DNA from: Octopus sinensis
Lineage: Eukaryota
NCBI RefSeq assembly: GCF_006345805.1
Contig: NW_021836127.1
Span: 124,001 to 188,000, forward strand
Direction: 5' to 3'
Length of the DNA: 64,000 bases
Part shown: one piece after another, positions 6,061 through 48,640 of the stretch
How positions within the stretch are numbered: the first letter of the stretch is position 1
Layout of the letters: every line of letters starts with the position of its first letter
Translations under genes and position numbers: made by a program
Notes under the pieces: model-generated
Told to the model about the DNA's origin: nothing
Database searches by the model: none
Seen by the model: the letters and a program-made list of their open reading frames with translations, nothing else

Positions 6061-6167
6061 AATATTCGTTTAGTTGTGATTTTTTTGTTTATATAATCAC
6101 ATTTTCTTTCAAAAGAATTTTCATATAATTTTATAGTTGTAATTTGAAAAATTAACTATTACTACAC

Positions 6168-6400
6168 ATGTCATCTTCGTTACGTCGTGATCTTAAACTT
6201 TCTCAAAAATTTGACATAATCAATTTGATTATCCAAGGAGGTCAAACTCGTGCAGTTCTATCTGCAAGATTAAAGTTTTCTCGGTCTCAAGTTTCACGGA
6301 TTTTGAAAATTAGAGTAGAAATTGAGGACGATGAAAATGCCATGCCCGTGAAAAACGCCAGTTCAGAAGCTATGGGTTCATGGAGATTCACACGCAGTTT
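6168..6400 (+). mobile_element. Tigger/pogo transposase N-terminal HTH fragment
   Basis: RRDLKLSQKFDII...LKFSRSQVSRILK resembles a psq/CENP-B N-terminal HTH. Confidence 0.6.
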
Positions 6401-6658
6401 CTTACTAATAGCTATTTAAAAAGTAAAATGGATATGGACAACTTTATGAAGTAGAAAAAGCTTCCTAAGCCTCTTCATAAGGCTTTCCAGTATAAATGTT
6501 AAGAAATTAATCGATGTTTACTGTAAAGCGATAATCATCTCAACTGTAGTTTTTAGTTCTTAATTAAATACGGTGTTAAACATCTGTAGTGTATTATTTT
6601 CACAAGATTATTTCCCCTCAATCCTGAAACATTCATTATTTTCTCAGCAACAAGTTTT

Positions 6659-7300
6659 TAATCATCCCAAAAATATAGAAAAACCAAATGATTTTTTTAG
6701 AACTAAAAAGGTAATATTCAGGACAGATGATATTCAATCAATTCTGACATTAATTTTCACTTTGCAGAAGATGGTACGAGCCCATAAAAATTAAGAAGAA
6801 ATTTTGAAACGATACATTCTAAATATGTCCATCGTTTCTTGTCATTAACGTTGATTTGCCTGTTAATTTTACAGTTGAGATAGAAAAATGTCGAAACGAT
6901 CATAGTTTTTCCATCCCATTAAAAACAAAACTCAATGATAACAAAGAAAATAAGTTTCAAAGTAAATTTTTGAAAAGAAATTTTAATGTTTTTTATTTGC
7001 TCCTGTGTTTGATATTTGGAATTGTGGAGAAAAAATTATAGCGGAAGGGAATAATACAAAAAATAATACTGAATGGGTTGATGTAAAAGCATCGACAGAA
7101 AAAATTAATAAAGCAATTGGATTCAACGATATAAATGTCAGCGATTTATTTGTTAAATTCCAAATTTTATTAAAATTATCGAATAGTTTTTGCCTACCTG
7201 TCACTATTGCTCCTGTAGAAAGATCGTTTTCCATCAAGAATTCCACTTGGTCAAAAGAAAAAGATCGAATGAAAAAAGAAACCTTCAAATCATTTTAGAA
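6659..7300 (+). mobile_element. hAT transposase C-terminal remnant; 6659-6885 is repeated at 28487-28708
   Basis: LPVTIAPVERSFS..KNSTWSKEKDRMKKE is the hAT dimerisation motif. About 220 bp are shared with 28487-28708. Confidence 0.7.
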
Positions 7301-7899
7301 TTGTAAATTGAACATTCGGATGCCGTGGATTGATTTTTTGAAATAATCAAAAATTTCTAGATAAGTTCATTTAGTTCAAAAATATACTCGAATTTCTTAG
7401 TTAATTTTAATTAAAGATATTTTCATGTTTCTCTGTGAAATTTTTTTGGCAAGCCTCAGTACTGCGATATTACTGACGATATCGTAAAGAACGGACAACT
7501 TTCCTGCCAATAAATCGTATTTATGACATTTCTCGACATCGACCTGCTTAAGGCGGTTTTGGAAAGTGATTCTCACTTTAATGAGAGAAATTTTGTTTTT
7601 AATTTTGTCGTACATAAATATGTCAGGCTTGTTGCACTTAATATTCGTGTCTGTAAGTATTTAAGAATCGATTCGTATTTCGACATTTTTTGATTGATTG
7701 GACAGAATAACTCTTCAATTTTTTAACTTTGCGGATTGCGAACTTCCTACATAGATGCAGGTGAATACATCTCACGACTTTGCTATGTCATAACATAATC
7801 AGTAATAATATTTTAGTCCTGATATAAGGTGCAAGTAAAATTCAGAATCATTACCTAATTTAAATAAATAAAATACATTCAGGTAAGTATTTCGGTTTT

Positions 7900-8550
7900 A
7901 AAACATTTACAGTCAGATCGAGGCTATACAGCGCAGGGATAGACAATAAAAGTCCCGGATGACCGAGTCAAGTAGTCAAGTATGAATCTTAGGGGATATC
8001 CTTTTTGGGCACCACGATATAAAAGAACGATTTTATTTTCAAAAACAAGCGAGGTTGTTAGTCATAAAGAGATCTACTATCTCAGGGGTAATTGCGATGC
8101 AGGTCTGAATAATTCGATTTTTTTGACGCTGTTAAAAGCGTTTTTGAAATCAAGTTTAATAGCGACCAGGGGAAAAACATGAGTTGATTTGAAAAATTTA
8201 CCAGCTACGTGTATTGGGTTTAGCATTTTTGGAATTTCCATGTTCGCTGCAGATTCATCACGTGCTTTGAGGAAGCTTTGGCTGCATTTTTGTCGAAATA
8301 GTTTCCAACAGAAAAAAAATAATATCACTAGCCTTTTTTATCAATAAAAAAAGTTTGCAGAGAAAAAAAGATCACTGGCTAAAGGAGGAATGTCTCCAAT
8401 TCAAATTCGGTTGACCAGACTGGTGATGACCGAAAAAGCGAGAAAATGTAAGGTCCTTGATGTGTTTAAGTCGTAAGGCCCTGAAGTAGTATGTAATTAC
8501 GCCGGGCATTCTCAAAGGGTAGGAAACGGTGGGTGGTCTGGGACAGGTTA
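7900..8550 (-). mobile_element. CRE-type pre-RT/RT fragment
   Basis: SGP..L.HIKDLT, IHVAGKF, IKLDFKNAFNSV and GAQKGYPL. Confidence 0.75.
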
Positions 8551-8693
8551 AAAAGTGTAAAGAAAGTTGTGATATGGTTAGATAAATGAGAAATTTGAAT
8601 TAAAAAGTAAAAAAAAATAGTTACTTAAAAATATTTTTTCCAATTATTTATATACAAATATATTTTAAATTCAGAATTTAAATTTTTAGAAAA

Positions 8694-10386
8694 ATGATAA
8701 TAAATTTTAATAACAAAATTATTCAAATGCATTACGAATTTTGTTCTAATACTGTTAACATAGAAAAGCTAATAACTCATGAAAAAAAAGTTTGGGGAGA
8801 TAAAGTATATTGTCTATTTTCAAATTTTTATAGAATATTATAACCTTTTGTTTATCATTCAAGAATATTTCAGAAAGATTTGAGCCATTATGCCACAAAT
8901 TTCGAATTAAGAATTGGTGCGAAATTTTTAAGATTAAAAAAACAAAAATTAAACCTCATAATGAACTAAATAAATTCAAGATTAATAATAATACAAGTAT
9001 TTTTACATATACTTAATTTTAGAGATAATTCCTCCCTATTTTTGTATCTATGAAGACAGACATGACTTAGTAAACTTTGTTCTCAGTGAATTTTCAGCAC
9101 ACAGCCCAATTCAACTCAATTCAAACATTCCATTTTTGTTTGTTTTTTATATTTATTTAGAAAAAATATTGTTTCGATATTATTACATTATTTTACTATT
9201 GATACATCCATATTTGTTTTAAAGAAACTAATATCAAATCCAAAGTATATGTTTCCTTTATGTTATTATGACTGCGAACTTCTAAACAAAGCCTTTCATA
9301 ATCTTTTTTACCGGAAATCAGTAATAATTACAGTTCAAAAAATAGAACAAATATTTGCATATATTCAAAGAATTTAATGAGTTGAATTCTAGTTATACTG
9401 ATTGGACAATTTTCATATTTAATCTGATTCCTTTTTCTTATTTGGTTTAATAAATAATTAATTTTTTAGTTAAGAGTAATTGATGCTTATTTTATATATG
9501 GAGTAAAAATAATCTTCAAGTTTGGAATTGCACTTTTTTTGATTTTTATTGATTCTGAAAGTAAAATATAAATTTATTAAAATCCAGAAAATGACTTTAA
9601 GATTGAACAAATGGAAATATTTTATAGTTCTTTTAAATTTCATGATCTATTTAAGGTTATTTCAACATATTTCTTACATTAAATTAGATTGCATATTCCT
9701 TGAAATTCACAGATGAAGACATTGAAAACGCATTTGTTCAAGATAATACTATTTTGTTGAAATCAACTAAAATTGATTATATTGAAGAAAATATACAAAA
9801 TCTAAATTCCAAAATTATAAATGTCAATCAAGTGAATATTTTATATTTATACTGCTTAGCTTAAAAAACTATATTCACATATGCCATTTAGAATTGGCTG
9901 TAAATCTCCCCAGTTAAACTTCTGCACTGATGACGATGGATGGAGTTTTCAAACTTTTTATAAAAAATTAAAAATACATCAAGAGTCTATAATTTTATTC
10001 AAAACTAATAAAAACGAGGTAGTTTGTCGAAAAATAATGATTAAGAGCTTTGGGGTTTTCAGTGGATGTAAATTAGATGTTCTAATGACTGAAAAGTGTT
10101 ATCAGGGAAATGGCGAAACTTTCGTGTTTAGACTAAATCCAAATTTTTCTGTACATCACTGGTCAGAAATAGAGAGTAATCAAATGTTTTTTGTCTTGAA
10201 TTCGGAATATTTTTCTGTAGGCGATGGGTTTGAATATTAGTTTTTACAATTAGTTCTATTGAAGCTATTTTTATTTTTAATGATCTACTTTCGGGAACTA
10301 CTCATAGTTGCCTTACGTTCAATAATCCTCCATTGGCTTCAAATGAATTTTCATGTATTAAAATCGAAATTATTGGATTTAGTTAA
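8694..10386 (+). CDS. TBC1D24: TBC domain + TLDc domain protein (TBC1D24/Skywalker-like), multi-exon; start codon uncertain
   Basis: Spliced translation gives NIVSILLHYF, YTDWTIFIFNLIPFSYL|LRVIDAYFIYGVKIIFKFGIAL and TLDc motifs DGWSFQTFY, GNGETFVF and SGTTHSCLTFNNPPL...EIIGFS* (TAA 10384-10386), matching the TBC1D24 architecture from memory. Confidence 0.8.
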
Positions 10387-10799
10387 AAAACAATTTTTTG
10401 TTTTATTATATATATTTTGACTAAAATAATAAGCATATTTCCATCACATATAAAATGACGTTTCAAAAGTTCATCTTAAATACTGAAAAAAGAGAAAAAT
10501 GCAATTTAGAAACATTTTATATAAGGAAAAGACTAGGACTGTGTGGAAAATAAGGAATTTGTTCATCTTTTAAGTTTATTCAACGTGAAGAAGAACATCT
10601 CAATCGGAACTATTTTTATCGGTTCCTGGACGTTGTGTTGCGTTTTTTAAAAAGTCTCCTCCTTGATTTCCAATCTGAATTTAATTTCCATCATCTAATT
10701 TTTGATATTTAGATCCCGTCGTTAAAGAATTCTGGTACTCTTCAGAGTTTTTCTATTTTAATACAAAAGTTGACTAATAAATAAAACAATAAACTAATT

Positions 10800-10960
10800 A
10801 AAGACTTCACGAGACGCTCTACCAGCCTCGCGAATAGCAAAGCCATTCCCTTGGATGATTGACTTTCCAAGAGCCAAGATGACTCTCTTTAGTTGTGTCG
10901 TATCCTGCCTCTCGATCCGCAGTGCGTCTTCGTCGGACTGACCCCTTGGTCCGATATAGC
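10800..10960 (-). mobile_element. CRE-type 3' terminal fragment
   Basis: ...IIQGNGFAIREAGRASRE; related to 44210-44362. Confidence 0.6.
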
Positions 10961-11516
10961 TTTACTAGTTTCTGATTTCATTTCATTAAAAAATAAATAT
11001 TGACCTTAAAAAAATTAAATACTATTTAATTTTGATTTATCATTGCGGTCAATATATTAAGTCTATTAAAATGATAGACTTGTATGTTATCGCTAGTTTC
11101 AGTTTAAAATTATATTTGGTCGAAACTCCGAATTTATTTATAAAATAAGCATTAATTCAAAATAAGCATGTAATCAAATATAGTTTCTAGTCAAAATTAA
11201 AATGACCTCAATTATCCAATAAGGAATCACGATCCGTTTGTCGTCAATATATTACTAGATAAATAAAAATATACAAAGAGTGTAAGAATGAATTTGTATT
11301 TGAACATTATTTTTGATTTTTTATTTGATTAAATATGATTAGTTATTTCCTAAACTTAGTCCAAAGAATATTGACTCTATTAAAAATGTAATAATTTATA
11401 TCAGAAGTTTTCACAAAGAAATTTCTCTCGGCTCAAATATTATAAAAAAATCTCGAGTCGCATAATCAAAAATCTAAATATATTTATAAAATTCCAAACT
11501 TATTATTTTTACATAA

Positions 11517-12060
11517 TTATTCTATGTCTGGCTGAATATTTGACAAGGTAAGTTGAATTTCTAAATCTAAATCCAGTAGATTTTCCCGCTTATTGGTTTT
11601 AATGTTTTGTAACGCGGAAAACCCCTTCTCACAGAAATAAGTTGTTGGAAATTTTAGAATGATTCTCGTTGTTTTAGAATGATCAAAAATATGCCTGTTA
11701 AATATGCAAGTTTTAATTTCCAAATCGAATTGGTGATCAATTCATGAAATTGATAGCATTGTTCTCTCGCGAAAAACTCAACAATCATATCTTTTTATCA
11801 TAGACTCAGGTTAATGCCCTTCCTCAGGATAACCATCCTATTCGATATGTAGGAATAAATTCTTATAACTTGCTTCCATTTCATCACATAAAGAATTAAG
11901 AAGTCTAGAATTTTTAGATTGAGTTTTATATAATTGATCATTTGTATCAAATCATCCAAAACTGATTTCAAAGCAAGCGGACGAGTTTTCAAAACCAATA
12001 CATCACGATGTAAAAAACAATATGTAGAAGGTATTTGATCATTTTGTGCTTTTAGTAAGA
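11517..12060 (-). mobile_element. Buster/ZBED5-like hAT transposase remnant
   Basis: LKSVLDDLIQMINYIK and FPTTYFCEKGFSAL..IKT.KR...LSNIQPDIE. Confidence 0.8.
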
Positions 12061-12388
12061 AACCTGAATTTAGTTATATAAAACACAATATACAAGTTCA
12101 TTAAGTCTTCCAAACATATACTTATTAACACGCACTACACATTATTTTTGCTTAATTCTTTAAATTAATCAATTGAATAATCTTTATATTCCAATGGGTA
12201 GATTCATTTGAAAACATATCCATTCAAATAAGACACTGTGATGAACTATTTCCAGTGCCACAACATTCAAAACCCATAGATAAAAAAGATGATTTGTAAT
12301 AGAACAAACGACGTTTGAGAGACATAATAAATAACAACGTGATTATAATTTATTATAATTTTTTTATAATAAATAATTTTTAAAATAA

Positions 12389-12913
12389 CAACGCGTCTGC
12401 TCGAGGCAACCGGCATCCCGTGCCAGCTGGAGCCCTCTGGCCTTAACAGGGGCGATGGCAAGAGGCCGGACGGCGTCTCGCTCTTCCCGTTCAAGTGCGG
12501 CAAAGCGATCGTCTGGGACGCGACATGCTCTGACACTTTTGCGTCAACATGCCTTCTCGCGTCCGCGATCGAAGCTGGCACAGCGGCGAGGAGGGCAGAG
12601 ACCCGGAAGAAAGACAAGTACGCCTCGCTCGCCGACAGATTCCTCTTTGTGCCTGTTTCAGTCGAAACATCAGGCACATTCGGCCCAGCCACGCTACGTT
12701 TTCTCACCGAGAGAGGCCGTCACCTCGGGAGGATTAGAAACGACCCCCGCGAGGTCAATCGGCTTTTTGAGCGCGTCTCAATAGCCGTACTCAGGGGGAA
12801 CAGTTTCTCTATTCTCTCTGCGGCCAGCAGCTGACTTCCTGTTCCATTTTCTTTTCTTTAGATTAATTTGATTATATTATTTTTTATTATTCAAAAATAA
12901 TTTTTTCAATCCA
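12389..12913 (+). mobile_element. 5'-truncated CRE-type element (RLE domain and 3' UTR)
   Basis: GIPCQLEPSGLNRGDGKRPDG, VWDATCSDTF, FVPVSVETSG and FERVSIAVLRGNSFSIL. Possible AT-rich TSD TTTTTAAAATAA at 12377-12388 and 12914-12925. Confidence 0.88.
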
Positions 12914-13022
12914 TTTTTAAAATAAAAATTTAAAAAATAAGTAAATATAAATCTTCACGCTGTGCAATGTTTGAAAACATCTGATTTATATAAGCGTAAT
13001 ATCTCAATCCAATTGATATTCC

Positions 13023-13896
13023 GGTACATATGTAGTAGTTGGCGGCCACTTTTTAGCGAATTTTAAAAAAACTATATTTTTTTTAGTTAAAAAAAATATA
13101 ATTAAAAATAATACAATATAAAAATAATAAAATCCCACGCTACTTTAATTTAAATGAGAAGTGAGGTCAATCTATTCAATCTACCCACAAATATGTCAGA
13201 AGCTATCAATTTCATGCAATCCAGAGGAATCATCCCAAAAAAAAAGTGTGTCGCAACGGACACCAAATGACTTTAAACGTTGGCAGCTCTCCGGCTTGGA
13301 ATTGCTACAGAAGGGGCTGTCGAAGTAAATCGAGTCTAAAAACTGGTATTTATATCATTAAAACTCAACAGGAACGTGGTTAGCAGGAACCAAAGTACCA
13401 TTCGAAGATATAATCCGGTTTGTCTACCTGTGGGCAAAAATATATCTTCTATGGAGATATGCATGGAAAATCTTGGTTGGGCTTCACATACAACCGTGGA
13501 CTGGTCAATGTACATGCGTGAAATTTGCATGCTATCATTGACATCTCGTCTATTGAAAGGTTTCCAATTATATAATTATTCCTTAGAATGTGGAGTAGCG
13601 CCGTATGGCGTAATAGAAAACAAAGGGGAACAGTCAGACAACACCTTAATAGTTATTTTACGGAGTTCATTTGGCGACAGACAGCCAAAAAGAAAGAATT
13701 TGAAACAATCATGGAGTGCATTGCCTTACATTGTCCCCCAGAATCAAAACTAAAATAAAAAAATAATTAATAATTTTGTATAAAAATAATTAATTTTTTT
13801 ATAGTAATATTATTTAAAAAAGGTAATTATCACCAAAAAAAATATAGTTTTTTTAAAATTCGCTAAAAAGTGGCCGCCAACTACTACATATGTACC
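13023..13896 (+). mobile_element. Merlin (IS1016/IS1595-like) DNA transposon, internally deleted
   Basis: About 60-bp near-perfect TIRs starting GGTACATATGTAGTAGTTGGCGGCC; 8-bp TSD GATATTCC (13015-13022, 13897-13904); remnants EAINFMQSRGII..C.NGHQM and HTTVDWSMYMREIC. Confidence 0.88.
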
Positions 13897-14473
13897 GATA
13901 TTCCATTTATAAAGGATTCACATATATCGTATGTATCCTGAAATATATTCTTTTCATATCAGCTTATCATTTAATTGGTTGTACTTGCAAATTATAATTT
14001 CTAGATTCTATTTGTACACTTATTTAATTTTTTTAAGCTGATAAATTAACATTACAAAACCGATTTTAGTGTTACAGTAAACAGAATAAACATAACTATA
14101 GCATTTTGTAAATCCCCATAGATGACACAATCTTTTCAAATAACAAAAGAAAGTAGTTTCTGAAGACGTCATCGCCCTTTAGTCCTGTCAAATCGAGTTT
14201 AACTATTTATTTACTTTTTATCTAAAATCAGTTTATTGAAATCAAAAAGAGTAAATGTACATCAAAAGTTAAAATTTATAATTTTTAAAACTTAAAACAG
14301 TCGGACATTATGATCGTAATTATAAAAAAACATTCATATTTAAACTAGAAAATTATCCTGAATCTAAGCCCTGGATCTTTAGCCTATGTTTATCAACCAG
14401 CTCTATATAATCAATAAATCATAAAAGAAATATCCATATTAAAATAAAACCAAAATAAATTAGTGTAAATAAA

Positions 14474-17400
14474 TTAAACCGAAAGACTAAATATTTGATT
14501 GAAAGAGTTTCCAACAATTTCACGGGCATTTGCATTAGGACAAATCACATCCACAGATGCTGTCTTTTCATAATACGAAACCACAAGTCTTGCTAGTACC
14601 AACATACCATTGTCAAATTTCATCGATAAATGAAACACATTCCGCCCCAAATCGTCAAAATTTACAAACAAGCTAAAAATATTCAACTTCTTCAACTCCG
14701 CTGACAAAATACCTACAAATCAAACACGAATGTAAGCCTTGATCGGGAAATGGAAGTGTGGGTAAATCGATACACGTTTTATAATCAGGCTGCACATTGT
14801 ACCACCATGAATTCTGATAGTTAGCCAAATTTCCACTCGGGGCAAACAAAACTGCCCCGTGTACTAACGTCTGGATAACTCCTTGGTTCATATTGACCAC
14901 AAACTATCTCAATTGTCCAAAAAGTACCTTTGGATAGATTAAAGTCGGAGATTTTGCCATAAAACATTGCTGAAAACTGATTGCTGTCTCAAAAGACACG
15001 TGATTGTGTGAGTTTGATATAACTTGAGGTTGAAACGGTACAATTAGCCCAAAACTGTCAAGGTTGTCAATTTATACAGCTTCAAACCTATTTTCTGAGA
15101 CTGACACGTTTTTAAACACCAACTGCTGTGCTGAACTTCCAAAAATATCCACTTTGGCAATAATAGCTTCCCCTCTACTCCAGAAAACATCCATTCGTAG
15201 AGACCCTGAACTCACTTTACAACTCCAAGACTACAAATCAATCAATCAACTCAAAAACTAACATAATTGGTCCTTTGAACTTGGCTTTGTGCCTTTACTG
15301 ACATGAACATTGAGTCGTCGTGACTGTAGGGAGGCGGATCAACCAACTCGTCCATGTTTGAGCCAAACTCTCCCATTAAATTGAGGGAGGACGGCTCAAT
15401 ATGTGAACTCTGGGGTCGAATGTATTAAAAAACTAATATTAAACTCACATAATACCAAAGAATCATCCAAAATATTATCAGGAGTCGACTCTGATTTTTT
15501 CGTGTTGTGAGGAATTAGAAACTGTTCGTCAAATCCCAGTAAATCATTCAAAAGATTCCCAGATTGACCACTAACACGAACATTGGTTAAATCAGTTGTA
15601 TTATCCTCACGTCTATAAAGGTTTATAAATTCACTAACGTTCTAGAAACAGTTGCCACGCTATTTTCCTGTCCATATGCAAGAGATGGAGGCTTGTGAGT
15701 AATAGAAGCCATGCTTCCAATGTGTTTTATCATTTCACTGAGTAGCTTTGGGTCAAGTGAGTCAATTTTTTCACTTATGGCTGGCTTTGTACTCAAAATA
15801 ATCTCCTTTGCTGCCTCAGGGTCACTCGACAGGAGTCTCCAGTAAATAAATCCCCGATCTCTTAAATCAGGATTTAGACTGTCCTAATGACTATAAAATG
15901 AAGAAATGTACTTTTGTGCACAAATCCAATATTTTCTCTACCAAATCCTGTCCTGACGGATTCTTGAGATAATATTTGACAACTGAAGTCAGTAGTTGTA
16001 GTTGCACCTGTTTTATTCTAGTTTATTAAACAACCTGAATATCCTCGTCAGAGAATGTCTCGATAAATGAGTTTAGTAGTTCATCTGCATTTTCTATTCG
16101 TTCAGAATACTCTCCGACAATCCAAACCATCGCTGCTCTAAAAGTAACCCCTGATAACCCACCTTGACTCTGGTTCATCCAACAAATCAAAATTCTCACA
16201 AAAATTTCCAATTATACTTTCATATTTATTCGGATATTTTCTAAATATATCCTAAACTAGTTATATCCATCAACCCGAATGACTACTATAGCCTCTTGGA
16301 TGATATAATCGACTTTAGACTTTACAAGTTCCTGCAGAGTGAGGACACACTGTTCTGCCACATCGGGGATCTTAATGGCACAACAACCAATGGCACGGAC
16401 CGACTTTCTTACAAAGTCAATGTCTACTCCTGTGGCGTACCTGAACAGTCATAAACTCACACAAACTCCTTCAATTCAGGCAGAACTCGGCTTATGTTGT
16501 CAATGTTAGTCAGACGTGTTATAATCTCCAGTTTCTCTAATTTTACATAAATCATGTCGTTGTATTTGACAAAGAAATTTGCGACTTCATTACACAACAC
16601 GTTTGGCCTGAAATTTTTAGGGTGGTTAACCTCTTTTGTAGGATTAGATTAATGTTACGTAACCCCACATATTGGATCTCTGAGGGGGCGGAAAGCATAG
16701 TTATGAGAGGATTTGACAGTTTTTTGTCACACGAGCTTAGAAATTCTCATCAGTCAGTCGTTCCATCATCCTCATCATCACTTTAATTGTCGACAGAACA
16801 ACTCCTGCATTCGAATGAGACAACCTCTGAGTAACACGTTCACAAATTCTATATTAATTCCAATGTGGCTACGTTTTGGCCTCTTTTTCTGTGCTTGGTT
16901 GATAGGCGGAGATATAATCCAAAATAGTGATCTGTCCCCATTCTGTACACTCGTTGAGAGCATTCATCAACAGATTAAGTTCACTTTGGGATATTTCTGC
17001 ATTCTTTCCCAAGGAAATCTGCTGCATCTCAGACATGGTGGCCACAGCATTAGCCACGACCTACACAATCAGATAACAGACCACCATAGAATTGGAATCT
17101 GTGAGGTAAGACTTTATATTTGAGAAGCCTTGGTCTTCTACTAGTTTAGGATTCAGTTTGTAGAGTTTTCCAATGCAAAGAACTGCAGTTTTCCTTACAT
17201 AGGGATCACTGTCCTTTAGACATTTACGAAGTGGGTCACATAAATATTCTGTCACACAATTCACATTCATACAAGCCATAGTTCTGATTGCAAGGGCACG
17301 AACGAGGGGAAATGGCTCGTTTGTGTCCTAAAATGAGTGGTGGGATATGACTTTGACAAATGAATTGACTGCCATTATAGCCATGTCGGGGTTTGAGTGG

Positions 17401-17720
17401 GAATAGTTTAACAGATATATATAAACCAGTTTTTTTAATTCCAAATCAGAGGTTTGACTGCAATTCAAAACGTCAACAAACAGGGAACTAAATTACACAC
17501 GTCAGTTATTTTGAAAAAATGTTTTTATTCAAAATATGTCAAGTATGTGATATTTTTGTACCTTACATCTTTTCCTGTGGTCATGAAAAATATCACTTTC
17601 TTTACAGCGTCCTTTCTTTTAAAAGGTTTATCGCTGGTTAATTCTGATTTTATTTCATTTAATTCGCCTATATTTGTTAAATATATATTTTCAACTGTTT
17701 TTGGCGTATGTTGAGGACAT
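14474..17720 (-). CDS. AP1B1: AP-1/AP-2 complex beta-adaptin, multi-exon (AP1B1 and AP2B1 not distinguishable); one apparent frameshift near 16750
   Basis: Spliced translation: [78 protein letters not shown], followed by C-terminal ear domains. Confidence 0.95.
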
Positions 17721-18135
17721 TGGTTTTACACCAGGTTAACGAGAAGATTAATTAGATATTTATTTGATAATTTAAATATTGAATAACGTAAATCTTTATC
17801 AATATATTTAATAATTTAAAAAAAAGAAAAGAAATAATAATAATTAACCGGCGTCCTGGTATTCTCAGTCAAACATAACTTTTGGTTTAAACTTTCAAGC
17901 CTGTCATCTCCGGGTGTTTGATTATTCCTAATTTTTTCCAAAATTGATTCAAATAATATTTTTATTATAATTGAAAATAATATTTTTTTATTTGGAAAAC
18001 CGAATTTAAAAAAATAAATAAAATTATATATCACTTTCATTTGTAACCTGTATTGTACGTACTGTCCGCGTCTCTCTTATTCAAAAAAATTTCAATTTTT
18101 TCCCACCCAAAATTTCAGAAATAAAATATTAACAA
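17721..18135. promoter_or_regulatory. Putative bidirectional promoter between beta-adaptin and INTS1
   Basis: 415 bp between two divergent start codons. No specific motifs proven. Confidence 0.5.
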
Positions 18136-26740: not shown

Positions 26741-27025
26741 GTTGGGAATCCTACGAGTGATAAAAACAAATAAATGGTACTTGAATATAATTGGAGGATT
26801 TCTCGCCTCCAAGTATGCAATTCTCTACATGAAGAATATGGATGTTGTGCTTATCAAAATGCTCAAAGAAATTACCGTATTTTCTCGATTATAACACGCA
26901 AATTTTTGTTATATAAATAATTCCAATATATGGGATGAGTTTTATAATTAATAACTAAAATAAATTGCAAATTTTCAAAAATAGCATTGTCAAACTAACT
27001 TTGACGTACCGACATTGTGCAGTTT

Positions 27026-27126
27026 CCAATTCAACTCAATTCAAAAATTCCATTTTTGTTTGTTTTTAACATTTATTTATAAAAAATATTGTTTCGATAT
27101 TATTACAGTATTTTACTTTGAATACA
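27026..27126 (+). pseudogene. Captured exon-intron-exon fragment of the TBC1D24-like gene
   Basis: Ungapped match to 9106-9206, 93/101 identical by manual count. It includes the 23-nt intron, whose acceptor AG has become AT. Confidence 0.85.
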
Positions 27127-27327
27127 GCTCGCTGATTAGCTGAACAGCATTGCCTTCCAACTCGCTGATTAGCTGATTTTCAGGGCTTTTACATCATCTC
27201 ATAAAGCAGATCGAAAATCGGCCATCTCTAGCCTTGTACTCGTCTCAACTCACACTCTCTCAGTTCGGTATGGACATTCTACAAGCAACATAGCATCAAA
27301 TTTGATAACAGCTTTAATTTTGATTCA

Positions 27328-27697
27328 CCCTCAGCCCTGTCGATGCGGTGGTACGGTGGACGTGAAAGGCCTTCACCCCCTCTCCTGCCGCCGACCGCAG
27401 GCCGCTTGCCTCGCCATTGAGCAATCAACGACGTAATCTCAAGAGCACTCAATGCTGCAGGCTTTCCCAATGTACTAAAACCCGCCGGATTGGACAGAGC
27501 GGATGGAAAACGCCCGGATAGGATGACTACCTTCCCATTCAAGAATGGCAATTGCCTCATCTGGGATTCCACGTTTGCAGATACGTGGTCCCCATCCGCT
27601 TTATTATCATCTGCATCTTCTTCCGGTTCGACCACTGCCTCCGCGGAAGCCCGCAATGTCAAAAAGTACAAGAATCTTGCCACTCGGCATTCCTTGG
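27328..27697 (+). mobile_element. CRE-type zinc finger/RLE fragment inside the pogo element
   Basis: PCRCGG, INDVISRAL, LDRADGKRPD, LIWDSTFADT. Confidence 0.85.
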
Positions 27698-28269
27698 GGC
27701 TTTTACATCATCTCATAAAGCAGATCGAACATCGAAAGCCGAGACTACCACTGGCCACCTCTAGCCTCGTACTCGTCTCAGCTCACACTCTCTCAGTTCA
27801 GTATGGAAATTCTACAAGCAACATGGCATTAAAACGGAAAAGTTATACCGATGCGTTCAAAAGAAAAGTCATTCAAGTGACAGAGGAATTGGGCAACAGA
27901 GAAGTTGAAAAAAATCGATATTAGTGAAGCTAACATCCGTGATTGGAGGAAGAAGAAAGACTCATTATTGAAAAGGAAAGCAACAGTAAAAGCATCAGGA
28001 CGTGGAAGAAAAAGGAAAATTTTAGGTGAACACTATAGTCGATTACTGGGTTTTTACAGATGTTTTGGCCCAAAATTATTTTCGTGTTATTTTTTGCGCG
28101 TGTTAAAATTGATAAATACGGTATTGGCTTATTAACATTAATTGTTAAGTGCTATACTCGGTGTTTTTTAAATGTATGAAAAACGCAACAGTCACCTAGC
28201 CACGTCCTCAGAATGTTTATCTAAGGAAGCAACTGTCAGCGGAGTTGCACTGTCTCTTGCATGACAGAA

Positions 28270-28708: not shown

Positions 28709-29659
28709 TATCATCCGTCCCGGATAATGGTGCCTTGTCCCGGATTTATGTGTCCCGGAATGTCCCGGATGATCATATTTATTATTATTTAGTAATGTGG
28801 GATTGTGATCAACTATACAATTATAAAAATTAAACAACAATAAAAATAATTTAATATAACATGTTCCTTAAAAATTATTTGTAATTAGAATGGCGATGGC
28901 GACAAATGATCTACGCTAATATTTTTATGTAACAGCATAAAAACTAAAAACTTAAATAAATAGTTAATAATTTTACGAAAATTCTTCTAGTTGCGCTGTC
29001 AATTAGTGGTCACTTGTGTAAATGATTGTGCTAATGTTGTTATAACTGTCAAGGTTTTTTTGTAAAAATCTGTTAATTGCACCCTCTATTCAAAGTCGGA
29101 AATCTGTTAATTCCACACTTTTTCAAGATCAAATTTGATAACAGCTTTAATTTGATTCATAGTCGATAATGATATATTGGAATTTAATTTTAAAAAGGAA
29201 ATCTGGAAGGTTTTAATGGATCTCATCATGTGAGTTGACGACATGCTTGTCGTTCATTTTAACCAAAATCCGTAAAGTATTTTTTGGCGGGAAGGTTTGA
29301 ATGACCGCGTCATGTGTGTCGAGGACATTCTTGTTGTTCATTTTAACCAAAATTAAGAAAATATTTTCTTAAATTTTTTGGCGGGAATGATTTAAGGACC
29401 TCATTATTGAGGTTATTCTTGATATGTAGTTTTTTTGGTGAAAGATTTTTGGGAAAGCTCGTCATTTGGGGAAAAAGAATTTTGACAGTTATTAGAGACA
29501 AGGATTTTGATAATTTATCTGTACTTTGTAAATTTGAAATTGGTGCCGCACTGACAGATACACAGAAACACACCATACAATTTTATTATTAAGATATCTT
29601 GACTATAACATTTAGCCATGTTTTTAAGCTATCTAATACATACTATACTATTTCAGGTT

Positions 29660-33420: not shown

Positions 33421-34919
33421 AAGTCGGTTCAAAAAAAACGTGACCACTTGAAAAATATGTGTTTTTCTTAATTTTTGTATCTTATTTTTAAAAATTTTCA
33501 AAGAATACTAAATTTAAAATCGTTTAATCTACATGATTCATTATTTATTATTTCATGATCGGCTATATTCCCAAGCTAACCAAGTATTTTAAAAAAACCT
33601 TTGTTCAAAAAAAACGTGACCACTTATTTTTGTTACACTTTTTTTTACAATTACTTGATTTTTCTTTAATAAATTAATTTCAAAATAAAGCACGATGTCA
33701 TCTCAAAGTTTCCTGATCAAAAAATATTCAATAGCGGAACACTTAAGGCGAGGATGCTCACAAAGAACAATCGCCAAAGAATTCAATGTTTCAAAATCTT
33801 TTGTGCAGCAAGTCAGCGCGAAAATGAAAAACGGAATGCCTTTTGAACGTGCCGTTGGTTCTGGTCGTCCAGAAAAACTTACTCTGTCGATTAAAAACGC
33901 AATATTGACGAAATATGGTCAAAATCATTTTTCCACTTTACAAGAAATTGCAAATTACATTGAATCTGAGCACAATTTACGACTTTCTCGATCAACAATA
34001 AGGAATGCTTTATATTCTTTTGGACTAGAAAATCGAAAACCGTGTAAAAAACCGTTATTACGACCAGTAAACGTGTTAAAGAGAAAATTATTTGCTGAAA
34101 ATTATTTAGGGATCTCGTTTGAAGATCTAGGCAAAATTATTTTCTCCGATGAAACAAAATTTGAGTTATTTTCAACAAATAAAAGAAATAATGTTCGATA
34201 TTTTCGCGGTGAAAAATATCATTCGGCCAACATTTTACCTACAGTTAAATTTGGAGGAGGAAGTATTCTAGCTTGGGGCTGTATTTCGTCCAATGGAGTA
34301 GGCCGGCTCGTTTTTATTGACGGAATTATGACGGCTGCGCATTATGTGCAAATTTTAGCACAAAATTTAAACCAATCCGCCAGAGAAATGAGTTTAACTG
34401 ACTTTGAGTTTATGCACGACAACGACCCAAAGCATACAGCTCGAGTCACAAGGAAATTTCTTAAAGAAGAAAAAATCAAAACAATTAATTGGCCTGCACA
34501 AAGTCCAGATCTCAATCCAATCGAGCATGTGTGGGCCTATATAAAGTTCCAGTTACGCAATATGGGAAGGCTTGATAAGGAAACTTTAAAGCAAGAAGTT
34601 TTGAAAATCTGGAACAACCTCCCCCCGGAACTAATAAGAAAATATGTTTTAAGCTTCCACAAACGAGTTCTGGAAGTATATAAGGCGAAAGGGAAGCATA
34701 TTAATTACTAATCGAATTTTGGTCACGTTTTTTTGAACAATGTTTTTTTGGAATATGTAGTTACTTTGAAAATGTAGCCGACAGTGACAAAAATAAAAAT
34801 TGAAATGTGTAGATAGAAAGGTTTTAAATTTGGTATTCCTTGGAGATTTTACATAAGAATCTATAAAAATTGAAAAAAACACACATTTTCAAGTGGTCAC
34901 GTTTTTTTTGAACAGACTG
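33421..34919 (+). mobile_element. Tc1-family transposon with IR/DR-type long TIRs
   Basis: Outer and inner repeats GTTCAAAAAAAACGTGACCA at 33427 and 33603, with inverted copies at about 34718 and 34890. The right end is ...ACAGACTG|TA; the left terminus reads AAGTCGG with no TA. Confidence 0.92.
33695..34711 (+). CDS. Intact Tc1 transposase, DD34E, 338 aa
   Basis: HTH, GSGRP, FSDETKF, WGCIS, HDNDPKH and SPDLNPIEHVW; 34 residues between D and E by manual count. Confidence 0.95.
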   Translation: MSSQSFLIKKYSIAEHLRRGCSQRTIAKEFNVSKSFVQQVSAKMKNGMPFERAVGSGRPEKLTLSIKNAILTKYGQNHFSTLQEIANYIESEHNLRLSRSTIRNALYSFGLENRKPCKKPLLRPVNVLKRKLFAENYLGISFEDLGKIIFSDETKFELFSTNKRNNVRYFRGEKYHSANILPTVKFGGGSILAWGCISSNGVGRLVFIDGIMTAAHYVQILAQNLNQSAREMSLTDFEFMHDNDPKHTARVTRKFLKEEKIKTINWPAQSPDLNPIEHVWAYIKFQLRNMGRLDKETLKQEVLKIWNNLPPELIRKYVLSFHKRVLEVYKAKGKHINY

Positions 34920-39389: not shown

Positions 39390-42082
39390 TGTCACATGGG
39401 TGATCAGACCCCTATGGGCAACCTGGCCTTTACGTGTTTCCATGGCAACTACATAGCAAATATTTACTAAAAGGCCAACTATTAGAAAGGCAAACGATCC
39501 GAACTAATGATTGAACTTTAAATTTTTGAGAAAATGATGTTTTATATTTAAACCATGCTTGCTTTAAAATAGTAAAATTATTTACAACATTAGCAAATTA
39601 TAATGTGAATTATTTTTATTTTTGATAATATAAATTGCAACATTAGCAAATTATAATTTATATCAAATTTTTTGCAAAGTTTGTAACAACTTTAACTCTA
39701 ACCTTAATTCAAACCCTAACGTTGGCAAGTGACAACATAAATATATTCAAAATCTAACCCTAACCTTTACCCAAACCCTAACGTTGGCAAGTGACAACAT
39801 AAATATATTCAAAATCTAAACCTAACCTTAACCCAAACCCTAACGTTGGCAAGTGACAACATAAATATTCAAAATCTAACCCTAACCTTAACCCAAACCC
39901 TAACGTTGGCAAGTGACAACATAAATATTCAAAATCTAACCCTAACCTTAACCCAAACCCTAACGTTGGCAAGTGACAACATAAATATTCAAAATCTAAA
40001 CCTAACCTTAACCCAAACCCTAACGTTGGCAAGTGACAACATAAATATTCAAAATCTAACCCTAACCTTAACCCAAACCCTAACGTTGGCAAGTGACAAC
40101 ATAAATATTCAAAATCTAAACCTAACCTTAACCCAAACCCTAACGTTGGCAAGTGACAACATAAATATTCAAAATCTAACCCTAACCTTAACCCTAACGT
40201 TGGCAAGTGACAACATAAATATTCAAAATCTAACCCTAACCTTAACCCTAACGTTGGCAAGTGACAACATAATATTCAAAATCTAAACCTAACCTTAACC
40301 CAAACCCTAACGTTGGCAAGTGACAACATAAATATTCAAATCTAACCCTAACCTTAACCCAAACCCTAACGTTGGCAAGTGACAACATAAATATTCAAAT
40401 CTAAACCTAACCTTAACCCAAACCTTAACGTTGGCAAGTGACAACATAAATATTCAAAATCTAACCCTAACCTTAACCCTAACGTTGGCAAGTGACAACA
40501 TAAATATTCAAAATCTAATCCTAACCTTAACCCTAACGTTGGCAAGTGACAACATAAATATTCAAAATCTAACCCTAACCTTAACCCTAACGTTGGCAAG
40601 TGACAACATAAATATTCAAAATCTAACCCTAACCTTAACCCTAACGTTGGCAAGTGACAACATAAATATTCAAAATCTAACCCTAACCTTAACCCTAACG
40701 TTGGCAAGTGACAACATAAATATTCAAAATCTAAACCTAACCTTAACCCTAACGTTGGCAAGTGACAACATAAATATTCAAAATCTAACCCTAACCTTAA
40801 CCCTAACGTTGGCAAGTGACAACATAAATATTCAAAATCTAACCCTAACCTTAACCCTAACGTTGGCAAGTGACAACATAAATATTCAAAATCTAACCTT
40901 AACCCTAACGTTGGCAAGTGACAACATAAATATTCAAAATCTAACCCTAACCTTAACCCTAACGTTGGCAAGTGACAACATAAATATTCAAAATCTAACC
41001 CTAACCTTAACCCTAACGTTGGCAAGTGACAACATAAATATTCAAAATCTAACCCTAACCTTAACCCTAACGTTGGCAAGTGACAACATAAATATTCAAA
41101 ATCTAACCCTAACCTTAACCCTAACGTTGGCAAGTGACAACATAAATATTCAAAATCTAACCTTAACCCTAACGTTGGCAAGTGACAACATAAATATTCA
41201 AAATCTAACCCTAACCTTAACCCAAACCCTAACGTTGGCAAGTGACAACATAAATATTCAAATTCTAACCCTAACCTTAACCCAAACCCTAACGTTGGCA
41301 AGTGACAACATAAATATTCAAAATCTAACCCTAACCTTAACCCTAACGTTGGCAAGTGACAACATAAATATTCAAAATCTAACCCTAACCTTAACCCTAA
41401 CGTTGGCAAGTGACAACATAAATATTCAAAATCTAACCTTAACCCTAACGTTGGCAAGTGACAACATAAATATTCAAAATCTAACCCTAACCTTAACCCT
41501 AACGTTGGCAAGTGACAACATAAATATTCAAAATCTAACCCTAACCTTAACCCAAACCCTAACGTTGGCAAGTGACAACATAAATATTCAAAATCTAAAC
41601 CTAACCTTAACCCAAACCCTAACGTTGGCAAGTGACAACATAAATATTCAAAATCTAACCCTAACCTTAACCCAAACCCTAACTCAAAATTAAATGATGT
41701 TTCTGCTGACGATTCTTCAGACATTTTTGACAAAAATTGGAAGCCTTTTTGGCCAACCGGTGTTTGCTTCGAGCATTCATATCCTCCGGGAATATCCCGA
41801 TTAACGCTTCCTTAATTTGATTGTATTCGTTCATATTTCTGACGTAACCCTTAAACCCAGACATCACAAAGTGTGAGTAACCACGCTGTTAAAATTAATA
41901 TACTTTTGGGTAAGCCATTTTTAAAAGATAATTCAAATGTAATTTTAAATTAGAATAATTGATTAATCTACACTCTTCCATATATAAATTGCTATATTCA
42001 ATATTTAATAGCTGTTCTGTGGTTTCCATAGAAACACGTAAAAGGACTGGCTGCCCATAGCGACATAGTCGCCCATGTGACA
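39390..42082 (-). mobile_element. TIR element with TGT...ACA ends (Ginger-like), interrupted by a minisatellite
   Basis: About 65-bp imperfect inverted repeats TGTCACATGGG...TTTACGTGTTTC at 39390-39453 and 42018-42082, with TA on both flanks. Track ORF 41679..41867 (YNQIKEALIGIFPEDMNARSKHRLAKKASNF) resembles the N-terminus of GIN/Ginger integrases. Confidence 0.6.
39698..41683. repeat. Minisatellite of 48/54/60-bp units with telomere-like hexamers (about 35 units)
   Basis: A constant core ACGTTGGCAAGTGACAACATAAATATTCAAAAT followed by a variable number of CTAACC/TTAACC/CAAACC hexamers. Confidence 0.98.
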
Positions 42083-44362: not shown

Positions 44363-44821
44363 TTTTTTTTAATTTCGATAATTTTTTTTCAAAGTAAATA
44401 ACTACAAGTTAATTAATAAAAGCTTCATGGGCGGGAAGCCGACGCGATCGAGAAAGAGTTAGAGCGTACTATCGCAAGGGATATCCGCTCGAAAAACCAT
44501 CTCGATTCACGGGCGTCGCCTGTGATAGCAGACATGCGGGACCCGATCTCCAGAACGAAGCTGATTGCCTTACTGCCCAAGGAACCGGAAGTCTCAACCG
44601 CGAATGGAAGGAATTGGAACTTCTCCGTAAGTGAAGAGTACTTCCGCATCTTTTTGCATTCCGCGGTTGTGACAATGGATCCAGGAGCGGATGAGGAGAT
44701 CAGCAGGTTCTGAGGCGAGAAAGTGTCCACACACGTGGCATCCCAGGTGAAAGGCTTCCCCTGTTTAAGGGAAACACAGTGATCCCGTCCCCCCGATCGA
44801 TCCCAGAGGGTTCAAGCAGGG
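44363..44821 (-). mobile_element. 5'-truncated CRE-type insertion with poly(A) tail and 12-bp TSD
   Basis: FTWDATCVDTF, FLPFAVETSG and WFFERISLAIVRSN; A-tract at about 44361-44370; TSD ACTGAGTAACTT at 44351-44362 and 44822-44833. Confidence 0.9.
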
Positions 44822-47773: not shown

Positions 47774-48405
47774 CAGTCGAACCCCGCCCCAACAAAAACC
47801 CCGCCTTGGGGCACCCTCGGTTTTTGGGGCGATTTTATTTTTTAGTACATTTTTCAGCAATAATTTCCAAGTTTGGAAATTATCAAAACCCCACTATGGG
47901 GCACTTTACTAATTTATTTTAATATTATTACATAATATTTTTTTGAATAATATTATTTTTGAACGTTTGATACTTCTCTTTGTGTAATGCCTTCCAAGAT
48001 TTCTATTGAAACAAAAATTAAAATTGCAAAGTGTCTACAAACTTCTTCTGAAAGAGAAGTTGCAAAAAAATTCAAGATAAGCAAGCCAGCAAAGGCACTA
48101 TTTCCCGAATAAAAAAAGCATTTCTTCTTTCATTAATACCGGATCAGTCATTTCAAGATTAGTTCAAATAGATGAAGTTGAACAAGCTTCTAATGAAACA
48201 AATCAATTTGAAAAACTTGACGAATTAACTTTTAATGCTTTTCGTCGATTGAGGGAAGATTTCTTTTCTATTTCGGGTACATTAATCAAAGCCATTGCGA
48301 AAAAAATATCGACAAAATTGGATTCTCGAACACCTTTTAAAGCCTCAAACGGTTGGCTAGACAGATTTAAGAAGAGACATGATTTTGCTTTTGGCCAATT
48401 GCTGT
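47774..48405 (+). mobile_element. Tigger-like pogo 5' part, truncated by a CRE insertion
   Basis: TA|CAGTCGAACCCCG terminus; REVAKKFKISK and FKASNGWLDRFKKRH. Confidence 0.8.
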
Positions 48406-48409
48406 TGAA

Positions 48410-48640
48410 ACCTCCTGTGTTTTTGGGGCCAAGACGCTTGCCCATCTCAAGAAACTTGGCCGCTTGTGCACCCACCGCTCCAGAGATCCGAGGGAATTTA
48501 TATTCCTCATTCAGAGGATCTCGCTGGCTGTTTTACGCGAGAATTGTCTTTCAATCCTGCGAGCCAGTTCATAATAGCTAGTTTTTTTTTGTTGATTTCG
48601 TTATTTTTAAATAAACCTTTAAGATTAAAAAAAAAATTTT
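48410..48640 (+). mobile_element. Short CRE-type insertion with 5' inversion
   Basis: 48410-48483 encodes SGAVGAQAAKFLEMGKRLGPKNTG on the minus strand. 48481-48570 encodes the continuation RDPREFIFLIQRISLAVLRENCLSIL on the plus strand. An A-tract lies at about 48628. Confidence 0.75.

What the first reader, a model, noticed from the sequence alone, without database searches (positions are those of the whole stretch)
26875..28121. Pack-type pogo transposon carrying an exon-intron-exon piece of a neighbouring gene
Seen: inside TA-flanked pogo TIRs, 27026-27126 matches 9106-9206 of the TBC1D24-like gene (93/101, ungapped). The source is coding (PF|LKNIVSILLHYF, matching the TBC domain) and its 23-nt intron is retained, so capture was DNA-level and ran from gene to element. 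Known: gene-fragment capture is well described for plant Pack-MULEs and Helitrons, much less for animal pogo elements. Inference: template switching during gap repair, using a local donor 18 kb away.
Basis: partly seen in the sequence, partly recalled or inferred. Interest (0 to 1): 0.75.

Follow-up and report, generated by a model that had tools for sequence, protein, structure and literature searches.

The report
Pogo transposon carrying a neighbouring gene's fragment
A decayed, non-autonomous pogo transposon really does carry a ~100-base exon-intron-exon copy of a TBC1D24-like gene lying 18 kb away, most likely pasted in during DNA-break repair; this is a clean example of a process already catalogued in animals, not a new one.

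Summary
Window 27026-27126 matches 9106-9206 at 93/101 ungapped, and the genome holds only six copies: element plus gene site, in each of three diverged copies of this region.

The source is coding. Removing eight GT-AG introns of 23-32 nt, including 9138-9160, leaves one open frame of 437 codons. It is colinear with TBC1D24/Skywalker proteins (TLDc 96 bits; TBC part hhalign 98%, E 2.5e-13, across the 23-nt junction).

Transfer ran from gene to element. The source's flanks are unique DNA. At least 25 other TA-flanked copies of this pogo family lack the piece, and the three that span the site carry about 150 nt of different native sequence there. The boundaries of similarity coincide with that replaced stretch, with 6-nt and 3-nt microhomologies.

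The element is a repair mosaic that also holds internal duplications and a fragment of a high-copy repeat. Nothing shows it moved after the capture, because every carrier shares the same flanks.

This fits the single-copy, nearby-donor, microhomology-guided "Pack-TIR" gap-filling class, of which 115 Tc/Mariner cases are published for animals. It is a new member of a known kind.

Side finding: the contig probably belongs to a second, ultrashort-intron animal co-assembled with a 2.7-Gb host.

The parts
26873..26874 (.). Left TA target-site duplicate
   Evidence: Read directly. Most other family copies are also preceded by TA.
26875..26899 (+). Left terminal inverted repeat, CCGTATTTTCTCGATTATAACACGC
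   Evidence: About 20/25 match to the reverse complement of the right end. The same terminus occurs at 30 distinct ends among the loci fetched.
26875..27031 (+). Native left arm of the pogo family
   Evidence: Aligns at 75-88% with family copies on other contigs, for example L014, L016, L017, L044, L045 and L046.
27026..27126 (+). Captured gene fragment: exon part, 23-nt intron, exon part, in sense orientation. Both ends overlap microhomology with native pogo sequence: CCAATT on the left, ACA on the right.
   Evidence: 93/101 identity to 9106-9206. Absent from all other family members; the three that span this site (L044, L045, L046) carry about 150 nt of unrelated native sequence here. Present in all three element copies of the duplicated region.
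27127..27300 (+). Native pogo 5' region resuming at CAGCTCGCTGATTAGCTG. It includes a 19-nt direct repeat (27125-27143 and 27158-27176) and the first copy of the 5'UTR/start-codon segment (27183-27300).
   Evidence: The other element copies hold a longer spacer between the 19-nt repeats that re-uses native pogo sequence.
27301..27696 (+). G+C-rich fragment of a high-copy repeat, probably retroelement-derived, nested or used as filler
   Evidence: At least 211 candidate copies at 79-90% identity on other contigs. Its first 33 nt match at least 255 places.
27697..28020 (+). Second copy of the pogo 5'UTR (27697-27833, about 80% identical to 27183-27300) followed by a frameshifted remnant of the transposase N-terminal helix-turn-helix (ATG at about 27827)
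   Evidence: Pfam on the frame-corrected 101 aa gives BrkDBD 4e-7, HTH_Tnp_1 1.7e-5 and CENP-B_N 4e-4. It is 42% identical to an intact pogo transposase, L077.
28014..28121 (+). Right arm and right TIR (28097-28121). The whole DDE catalytic region is deleted between about 28000 and 28014.
   Evidence: Family copies match 28014-28123. TIR alignment.
28122..28123 (.). Right TA target-site duplicate
   Evidence: Read directly.
9106..9206 (+). Donor segment: exon end 9106-9137 (PIQLNSNIPF + TT), 23-nt intron 9138-9160 (GTTTGTTTTTTATATTTATTTAG), exon start 9161-9206 (A + KNIVSILLHYFTIDT)
   Evidence: The flanks 8700-9105 and 9207-9620 occur only three times in the genome, once per copy of the region.
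8861..10386 (+). Resolved part of the TBC1D24/Skywalker-like gene: 9 exons and 8 introns of 23-32 nt, with stop TAA at 10384-10386. The start codon was not located.
   Evidence: Splicing gives one open frame of 437 codons. TLDc Pfam hit of 96 bits over profile positions 4-169 of 170. Best solved structure is the Drosophila Skywalker TLDc domain, 6r82. The TBC part scores hhalign 98%, E 2.5e-13.

Best explanation
A non-autonomous copy of a pogo-family DNA transposon (26875-28121; TA duplication, about 25-nt TIRs, transposase reduced to a broken N-terminal HTH) suffered a double-strand break or an excision gap. The gap was repaired by error-prone, synthesis-dependent copying that switched templates several times.

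One switch was guided by a 6-nt match (CCAATT) and landed in the TBC-domain part of a TBC1D24/Skywalker-like gene 18 kb upstream on the same strand. About 95 nt of genomic DNA were copied: the end of one exon, its 23-nt intron and the start of the next exon. Synthesis then returned to pogo sequence at a 3-nt match (ACA). About 150 nt of native pogo sequence were replaced.

Other switches duplicated parts of the pogo 5' region and may also account for the fragment of a high-copy repeat at 27301-27696; that fragment could equally be an ordinary nested insertion.

The mosaic then multiplied only because the whole region was duplicated, not by transposition. The captured piece has since decayed neutrally; in the window copy the intron's AG is now AT.

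Shown: the match, its low copy number, the coding and intron status of the donor, the absence of the piece from other family members, and the junction sequences. Inferred: the repair pathway, and what triggered the break.
For: Match and copy number.

Donor embedded in unique DNA.

Donor is exon-intron-exon:
- Eight tiny GT-AG introns restore a 437-codon frame.
- The TLDc hit rises from 60.7 bits (unspliced frame) to 96 bits after splicing.
- The protein is colinear with five TBC1D24-type proteins; the A1-invariant columns P83, P91, L101 and H102 lie inside the piece.
- hhalign of the TBC part alone gives 98%, E 2.5e-13, and spans the 23-nt junction.
- A 21-nt intron in the neighbouring beta-adaptin gene shows that tiny introns are the rule here.

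Direction:
- Seven family members align up to 27031-27046. L044, L045 and L046, which continue across the site, then carry different native sequence and realign at about 27125.
- The limits of similarity to the gene coincide with the limits of that replaced stretch.

Mosaic structure.

No transposition after capture: every carrier shares its flanks.

Agreement with the published gap-filling model: nearby donor, microhomology, single locus (PMC8277862).
Against: - There is no pre-capture allele or orthologous locus lacking the insert, so neither the order of events nor the trigger (excision or internal break) is observed.
- The microhomologies are short (6 and 3 nt) and lie in A+T-rich sequence.
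- The native sequence across the replaced stretch rests on only three fairly divergent family copies (about 75-80% identity).
- Splicing of the 23-nt intron is inferred from frame restoration and homology, not from transcripts.
- Pfam's own RabGAP-TBC model does not reach E 0.1 on the spliced protein.
- The three 'duplicates' could in part be haplotypes or co-assembled strains, although two lie on one contig.
Confidence: 0.8

Rival explanations
1. Reverse direction: the gene's exon-intron-exon stretch was derived from pogo sequence, by exonisation or by conversion from the element.
For: The two loci share sequence, and similarity alone does not give a direction. Native pogo sequence has a weak resemblance (CCAAYT...AATTCAAA) to the start of the segment.
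Against: The segment encodes the best-conserved motif of the TBC part (P..P..LH[YF]) in register with TBC1D24-type proteins. It is continuous with unique flanks at the same identity in all three copies. No other family member has it.
Confidence: 0.03
2. Both loci independently hold a fragment of a third, unrecognised repeat.
For: The region is A+T-rich, the genome search skips very common words (note), and other parts of the element are fragments of high-copy repeats.
Against: All 6 first-look candidates were scored, and they are exactly the 2 x 3 expected copies. The gene copy is coding and in frame. The limits of similarity coincide with the non-native stretch of the element.
Confidence: 0.04
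3. A true mobile Pack element: capture through replication-fork switching, followed by transposition of the cargo-bearing element. This is the multicopy route of Tan et al.
For: TIRs and TA flanks are retained, and there are 3 to 5 copies of the rearranged element. The family has been mobile, with at least 25 loci.
Against: All copies share homologous flanks for more than 1 kb upstream and about 100 bp downstream, so they arose by duplication of the region. The donor is nearby on the same contig in each copy, at 18-27 kb. No autonomous member of the family was found.
Confidence: 0.08
4. Assembly artefact: a chimeric join placed gene sequence inside a repeat.
For: The contig is an unplaced 272-kb piece of a large mixed assembly. 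Two further copies of the element end at contig breaks inside it.
Against: Three separately assembled element copies carry the piece, each with its own substitutions and indels. Captured and donor copies differ at 8 of 101 positions.
Confidence: 0.02

Closest known systems
Single-copy Pack-TIRs of animals made by transposition-independent gap filling (Tan et al. 2021, Nat Commun, PMC8277862), for example Pack-Tigger1 in gibbon
   Same: A TIR element of the Tc/Mariner superfamily with a TA duplication. It holds an internal non-TE insert whose parent lies nearby on the same sequence. There is microhomology at the breakpoints, a modest internal stretch is replaced, and the event is confined to a single locus.
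   Different: The donor distance (18 kb) is just outside their commonest bin (<15 kb). The host organism has ultrashort introns, so a 101-nt insert spans an entire intron. No outgroup locus is available to show the element before capture. Transcription was not tested.
Plant Pack-MULEs, Pack-CACTA and Helitron gene capture
   Same: A DNA transposon carrying an exon-intron fragment of a host gene, copied at the DNA level.
   Different: The superfamily is different (pogo; 2-bp TA duplication rather than 9-10 bp for MULEs; no rolling-circle features). There is one short fragment only, and no amplification by transposition.
Filler DNA and abortive gap repair after P-element, Ac/Ds or Tc1/mariner excision (synthesis-dependent strand annealing with template switching)
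   Same: A mosaic of internal deletion, local duplications and short ectopic inserts joined at microhomologies, with a preference for nearby templates.
   Different: Those cases were observed experimentally. Here the pathway is inferred from the end product alone.
pogo/Tigger group of Tc1/mariner transposons and their MITE-like derivatives
   Same: TA target, short TIRs, a psq/CENP-B-type N-terminal HTH, and many short deletion derivatives of 330-540 bp.
   Different: This copy has no DDE_1 domain, and no autonomous member of its own family was found. The nearest intact transposase in the assembly is only 42% identical over the N-terminus.

Membership tests
pogo/Tigger group (Tc1/mariner superfamily) | 2-bp TA target-site duplication | tested here: met
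   TA at 26873-4 and 28122-3. Most of the 30 family termini are preceded by TA. No empty site is available to prove the duplication.
pogo/Tigger group (Tc1/mariner superfamily) | Short terminal inverted repeats | tested here: met
   About 20/25 match between the two ends. The family consensus is CCGTATTTTCTCGATTWTAACRCGC at both ends.
pogo/Tigger group (Tc1/mariner superfamily) | Transposase with an N-terminal psq/CENP-B-type HTH | tested here: met
   The frameshift-corrected remnant gives BrkDBD E 4e-7 (30.3 bits, above the 23.4 cut-off). CENP-B_N at 20.4 bits is just under its 21.2 cut-off.
pogo/Tigger group (Tc1/mariner superfamily) | HTH_Tnp_Tc5 plus DDE_1 catalytic domain | tested here: not met
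   Deleted in this copy and in the related copies examined, so the copy is non-autonomous. A 444-aa transposase elsewhere in the assembly (L077) is 42% identical over the N-terminus, has a similar terminus (CCGTATTTTCC...), and has HTH_Tnp_Tc5 (8e-13) and DDE_1 (6e-29).
Pack-TIR (Tan et al. 2021) | An internal sequence that is not TE-derived and has a parental copy elsewhere in the genome | tested here: met
   The parent at 9106-9206 lies in unique coding DNA. The insert is absent from other family members.
Pack-TIR (Tan et al. 2021) | Gap-filling signature: nearby donor, microhomology at breakpoints, single locus | tested here: met
   Donor at 17.9 kb on the same contig and strand. CCAATT and ACA at the junctions. 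All carriers share their flanks.
Pack-TIR (Tan et al. 2021) | Element present without the insert at the orthologous locus of an outgroup | not testable with these tools
   No related genome is available. All 3 to 5 copies of the locus already carry the rearranged element.
TBC1D24/Skywalker family (the donor gene) | C-terminal TLDc domain | tested here: met
   PF07534, 96.1 bits, profile positions 4-169 of 170 on the spliced protein. Best PDB hit is the Skywalker TLDc domain, 6r82, at 5e-11.
TBC1D24/Skywalker family (the donor gene) | N-terminal TBC (RabGAP-like) domain | tested here: inconclusive
   Pfam RabGAP-TBC gives no hit at E <= 0.1. The non-TLDc part aligns to a 15-sequence alignment of TBC1D24-length proteins retrieved through their TLDc match at hhalign 98%, E 2.5e-13, over 171 columns. 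The columns R..W, P, P, LH, W, F, L, D, G and K are invariant across the six sequences of A1.

The most novel reading that the evidence does not exclude
The captured sense-strand exon-intron-exon piece sits in the pogo 5' leader, upstream of the old transposase start. It may be transcribed from the element's promoter, or feed the small-RNA silencing that targets the pogo family, and so couple TE silencing to the TBC1D24-like gene. More broadly, in an ultrashort-intron parasite genome, repair of DNA transposons might routinely shuffle complete exon-intron modules.
Probability: 0.05. Interest if true: 0.55.

Novelty: new member of a known kind. Interest (0 to 1): 0.3.

Why it matters
This is a well-resolved case of host-gene capture by a pogo-type element. 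Direction, junctions and donor structure can all be read from the sequence.

- **Retained intron.** The 23-nt intron gives unusually direct proof that the copy was made from DNA.
- **Taxon.** It extends the catalogue of animal Pack-TIRs to an organism with ultrashort introns, a trait so far reported only for myxobolid myxozoans and Dicyema.
- **Mechanism.** It does not change what is known about the mechanism. The fragment is too short and too decayed to make a new gene.
- **Practical side result.** This contig, and thousands like it, seem to come from a second organism inside a host assembly.

Tried and rejected
1. Unspliced Pfam scans. Pfam on X-masked frames of the window 1-14500 (+) and 20 kb upstream found only the TLDc exon and no TBC domain. 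At first this suggested that 9106-9206 was intronic. tblastn with TBC1D24-type proteins then showed colinear short exons, and splicing out tiny introns gave one frame.

2. Ciliate germline DNA. I considered a ciliate origin (tiny introns, TA-bounded insert resembling an IES). I rejected it because the gene ends with TAA exactly where its homologues end. The exons contain no in-frame TAA or TAG. By my recollection the beta-adaptin is also very close to animal sequences; the measured figure is 58% identity to the host's copy on C20.

3. A second nearby filler. 27295-27327 matches 29128-29159 at 32/33 and looked like another local donor. I rejected this because the 33-mer has at least 255 genomic matches, so it is part of a high-copy repeat.

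4. Other cargo in the family.
- The 539-bp insert in the C9457 copy is a high-copy repeat with at least 279 candidates, not a gene fragment.
- No other non-TE cargo was identified, but only this one insert was tested. The extra ~75 bp in L045/L046 and an unassigned ~530 bp in the C12470 copies were not searched.

5. An autonomous member of the family. None was found. The closest copies have ORFs of 161 aa or less.

6. A close homologue of the TLDc exon. The best match in the 1.84-billion-protein library is 41% identical, so no near relative was available for exon mapping.

7. Contigs C6252 and C566. Both end inside the element just after the captured piece, so they cannot show whether they carry it.

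Full report
**Observation**

Window 27026-27126 and 9106-9206 align without gaps at 93 of 101 positions. blastn gives E 3e-37 within the window. A 41-nt core occurs twice against none expected from shuffles.

The element's limits are exact. TA at 26873-4 precedes CCGTATTTTCTCGATTATAACACGC at 26875. The inverted copy ends at 28121 and is followed by TA at 28122-3. About 20 of the first 25 terminal positions match between the two ends.

**Copy number**

The window is C12598:124001-188000 of a 2.72-Gb assembly. The 101-nt piece has six matches in the whole assembly, and all six first-look candidates were scored. They fall into two kinds:

- "Element" copies: the window, C12598:256912 and C12636:65264.
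- "Gene" copies: the window, C12598:237951 and C12636:38471.

Within each kind the surrounding 2-3 kb is 90-97% identical. Between the kinds only the 101 nt match. The whole region therefore exists in three diverged copies, each with a donor and a carrier 18-27 kb apart, and the capture predates that duplication. The 400 nt on either side of the donor occur only three times in the genome, so the donor lies in unique DNA.

**Is the donor coding?**

My first scans argued against it. Pfam on unspliced frames found only a TLDc exon at 9860-10237, with no TBC domain in the window or in 20 kb upstream. That exon is closest to the Drosophila Skywalker TLDc domain, PDB 6r82.

A search of 1.84 billion representative proteins returned TBC1D24-length proteins. 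tblastn with five of them then showed weak but colinear hits at 9168-9254, 9370-9447 and 9470-9544, ahead of the TLDc exon. Reading the DNA showed that each change of frame coincides with a GT...AG stretch of 23-32 nt.

The eight introns are:

| Intron | Length (nt) |
|---|---|
| 8997-9022 | 26 |
| 9138-9160 | 23 |
| 9321-9345 | 25 |
| 9445-9469 | 25 |
| 9561-9587 | 27 |
| 9656-9687 | 32 |
| 9832-9859 | 28 |
| 10228-10253 | 26 |

Removing them yields one open frame of 437 codons. It ends at TAA 10384-6, exactly where the homologues end.

Three results support the spliced model:

- The TLDc hit rises from 60.7 to 96.1 bits and then covers profile positions 4-169 of 170.
- The protein aligns colinearly with five TBC1D24-type proteins. 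The columns that are invariant in that six-sequence alignment include P83, P91, L101 and H102.
- The non-TLDc part alone matches a 15-sequence family alignment at hhalign probability 98%, E 2.5e-13 over 171 columns. The aligned block runs straight across the 23-nt junction.

The donor is therefore made of three parts. Its first part, 9106-9137, is an exon end encoding PIQLNSNIPF. A 23-nt intron follows at 9138-9160. The last part, 9161-9206, is an exon start encoding (L)KNIVSILLHYFTIDT.

Such introns are the rule in this genome. The neighbouring beta-adaptin gene has a 21-nt intron at 17061-17081. A homologous gene on chromosome-scale scaffold C20 has an intron of about 1.9 kb at the same position.

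Only the window's gene copy is open. The two other copies carry frameshifts. These could be real pseudogenisation or assembly errors.

**The carrier**

Genome searches with the two arms of the element found at least 25 further copies of the same family on other contigs. They share the terminus CCGTATTTTCTCGATTWTAACRCGC at both ends and are mostly flanked by TA. Most are MITE-like derivatives of 330-540 bp.

The window copy keeps only a frameshifted N-terminal helix-turn-helix of the transposase, from about 27827. Pfam gives BrkDBD 4e-7 and CENP-B_N 4e-4. This remnant is 42% identical to a 444-aa transposase elsewhere in the assembly that has BrkDBD, HTH_Tnp_Tc5 and DDE_1 domains and a similar terminus. 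It is thus a non-autonomous pogo-group element. No autonomous member of its own family was found.

**Direction and junctions**

Seven family members align with the window element up to 27031-27046. After ...GTGCAATTTCCAAYT they read TTDAATTCAAAATACACGCATATTAAAGATC... L044, L045 and L046 continue for about 150 nt of native sequence, and they realign with the window at about 27125 (CAGCGCTGGTTGATTG against CAGCTCGCTGATTAGCTG).

The window element instead carries the gene-derived piece between these two points. The limits of similarity to the gene coincide with the limits of the non-native stretch. That is expected if the piece was copied into the element, and it would be a coincidence under the reverse direction.

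- Left junction: native pogo and the gene share CCAATT, and AATTCAAA lies a few bases further on.
- Right junction: they share ACA (GATACA|TCC in the gene, CTGACA|GCG in pogo, AATACA|GCT in the element).

All three element copies share a few derived differences from the gene copies. Two of them still have the intron's TTTAG, which the window copy has mutated to TTTAT. This fits neutral decay after a single capture.

**The rest of the element**

It is a mosaic:

- A 19-nt direct repeat at 27125/27158. In the other copies it encloses a longer spacer that re-uses native pogo sequence.
- Two copies of the 5'UTR/start region that are only about 80% identical (27183-27300 and 27697-27833).
- Between these two copies, a 396-nt fragment of a high-copy repeat.
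- Deletion of the whole catalytic region.

This is the product expected from synthesis-dependent repair with repeated template switching.

All carriers share more than 1 kb of upstream flank and about 100 bp of downstream flank. Nothing therefore suggests that the element moved after the capture.

**Comparison with what is known**

Tan et al. 2021 (PMC8277862) described 370 Pack-TIRs in 100 animal genomes. Of these, 115 are Tc/Mariner elements, and one is a Pack-Tigger1. Single-copy cases show a bias to nearby donors (57% within 15 kb), microhomology at breakpoints (1-36 bp, median 2) and small internal gaps. The authors explain them by transposition-independent gap filling.

The present case fits that class in every feature I could test. 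The outgroup test, an element without the insert at the orthologous locus, cannot be done here. This is a new member of a known kind.

**Context noticed on the way**

- Every relative of the window's repeats lies on contigs numbered C49 or higher, and none lies on scaffolds C1-C28. This holds for the pogo family, the G+C-rich repeat, the 33-mer and the 539-bp repeat.
- C20 carries its own beta-adaptin, 58% identical, with 1-4 kb introns at positions where the window's gene has about 21 nt.
- Introns under 30 nt are reported among animals only for myxobolid myxozoans and Dicyema japonicum (PMC13644364).

The window therefore most likely belongs to a second, parasitic or commensal animal co-assembled with the 2.7-Gb host. 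Which animal that is remains an inference.

**Verdict**

The mechanism is probable at about 0.8. The kind of event is already known, and interest is modest.

Noticed in passing
window 8861-10386 (+) and 14400-17725 (-): Genes in this window have ultrashort GT-AG introns of 21-32 nt. There are eight in the TBC1D24-like gene, and a 21-nt one at 17061-17081 in the beta-adaptin gene. Among animals this is reported only for myxobolid myxozoans and Dicyema (PMC13644364).
   Followed up: partly
whole assembly G000; L080 = C20:19934700-19944699: The contig seems to come from a different organism than the chromosome-scale scaffolds. All relatives of the window's repeats lie on contigs C49 or higher and none on C1-C28. 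C20 has its own beta-adaptin (58% identical, local G+C 35%) with 1-4 kb introns at the same positions.
   Followed up: partly
C12598:140878, 245735 and 264561; C12636:55030: The region is multiplied in a complex way. Beta-adaptin has three near-identical copies on contig C12598 and one on C12636. The TBC1D24-like gene and the element have two copies on C12598 and one on C12636. Partial element copies sit at the ends of contigs C6252 and C566.
   Followed up: partly
L003 (C12636:36971-40072) and L006 (C12598:236451-239549): The two other copies of the TBC1D24-like gene carry frameshifts (several in L003, many in L006), while the window copy is open. They are either pseudogenes or poorly polished sequence.
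   Followed up: partly
window 39712-41683: A 54-nt satellite of about 35 copies whose unit contains telomere-like CCCTAA motifs (AACCCTAAC...CTAACCCTAACC). It may be a subtelomere-type repeat lying inside the contig.
   Followed up: no
window 60400-64000: A 16-nt satellite (ATGCTTCTGAGCCTGT) of about 225 copies, G+C-rich with strong AT skew, running off the end of the window.
   Followed up: no
window 33689-34708 (+): An uninterrupted 340-aa Tc1/mariner transposase frame (HTH_Tnp_Tc3_2 plus DDE_3). It may belong to an intact element.
   Followed up: partly
window 3-1142 (-); L009: A LINE-type endonuclease (Exo_endo_phos) frame at the window's start and reverse-transcriptase frames just upstream. 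G+C-rich fragments of a shared conserved segment recur at 3134-3856, 12373-12831, 27301-27696, 44428-44811 and 48383-48571, with no Pfam match.
   Followed up: partly
L029 1579-2117 (C9457:17914-18452): A repeat of about 533 bp with at least 279 candidate copies is nested in another copy of the pogo family. It looks like an abundant short non-autonomous element of the minor genome.
   Followed up: partly
window 29205-29367: A short 84-nt tandem duplication (1.9 copies), 1.1 kb downstream of the element and next to the 33-mer of the high-copy repeat at 29128-29159.
   Followed up: no
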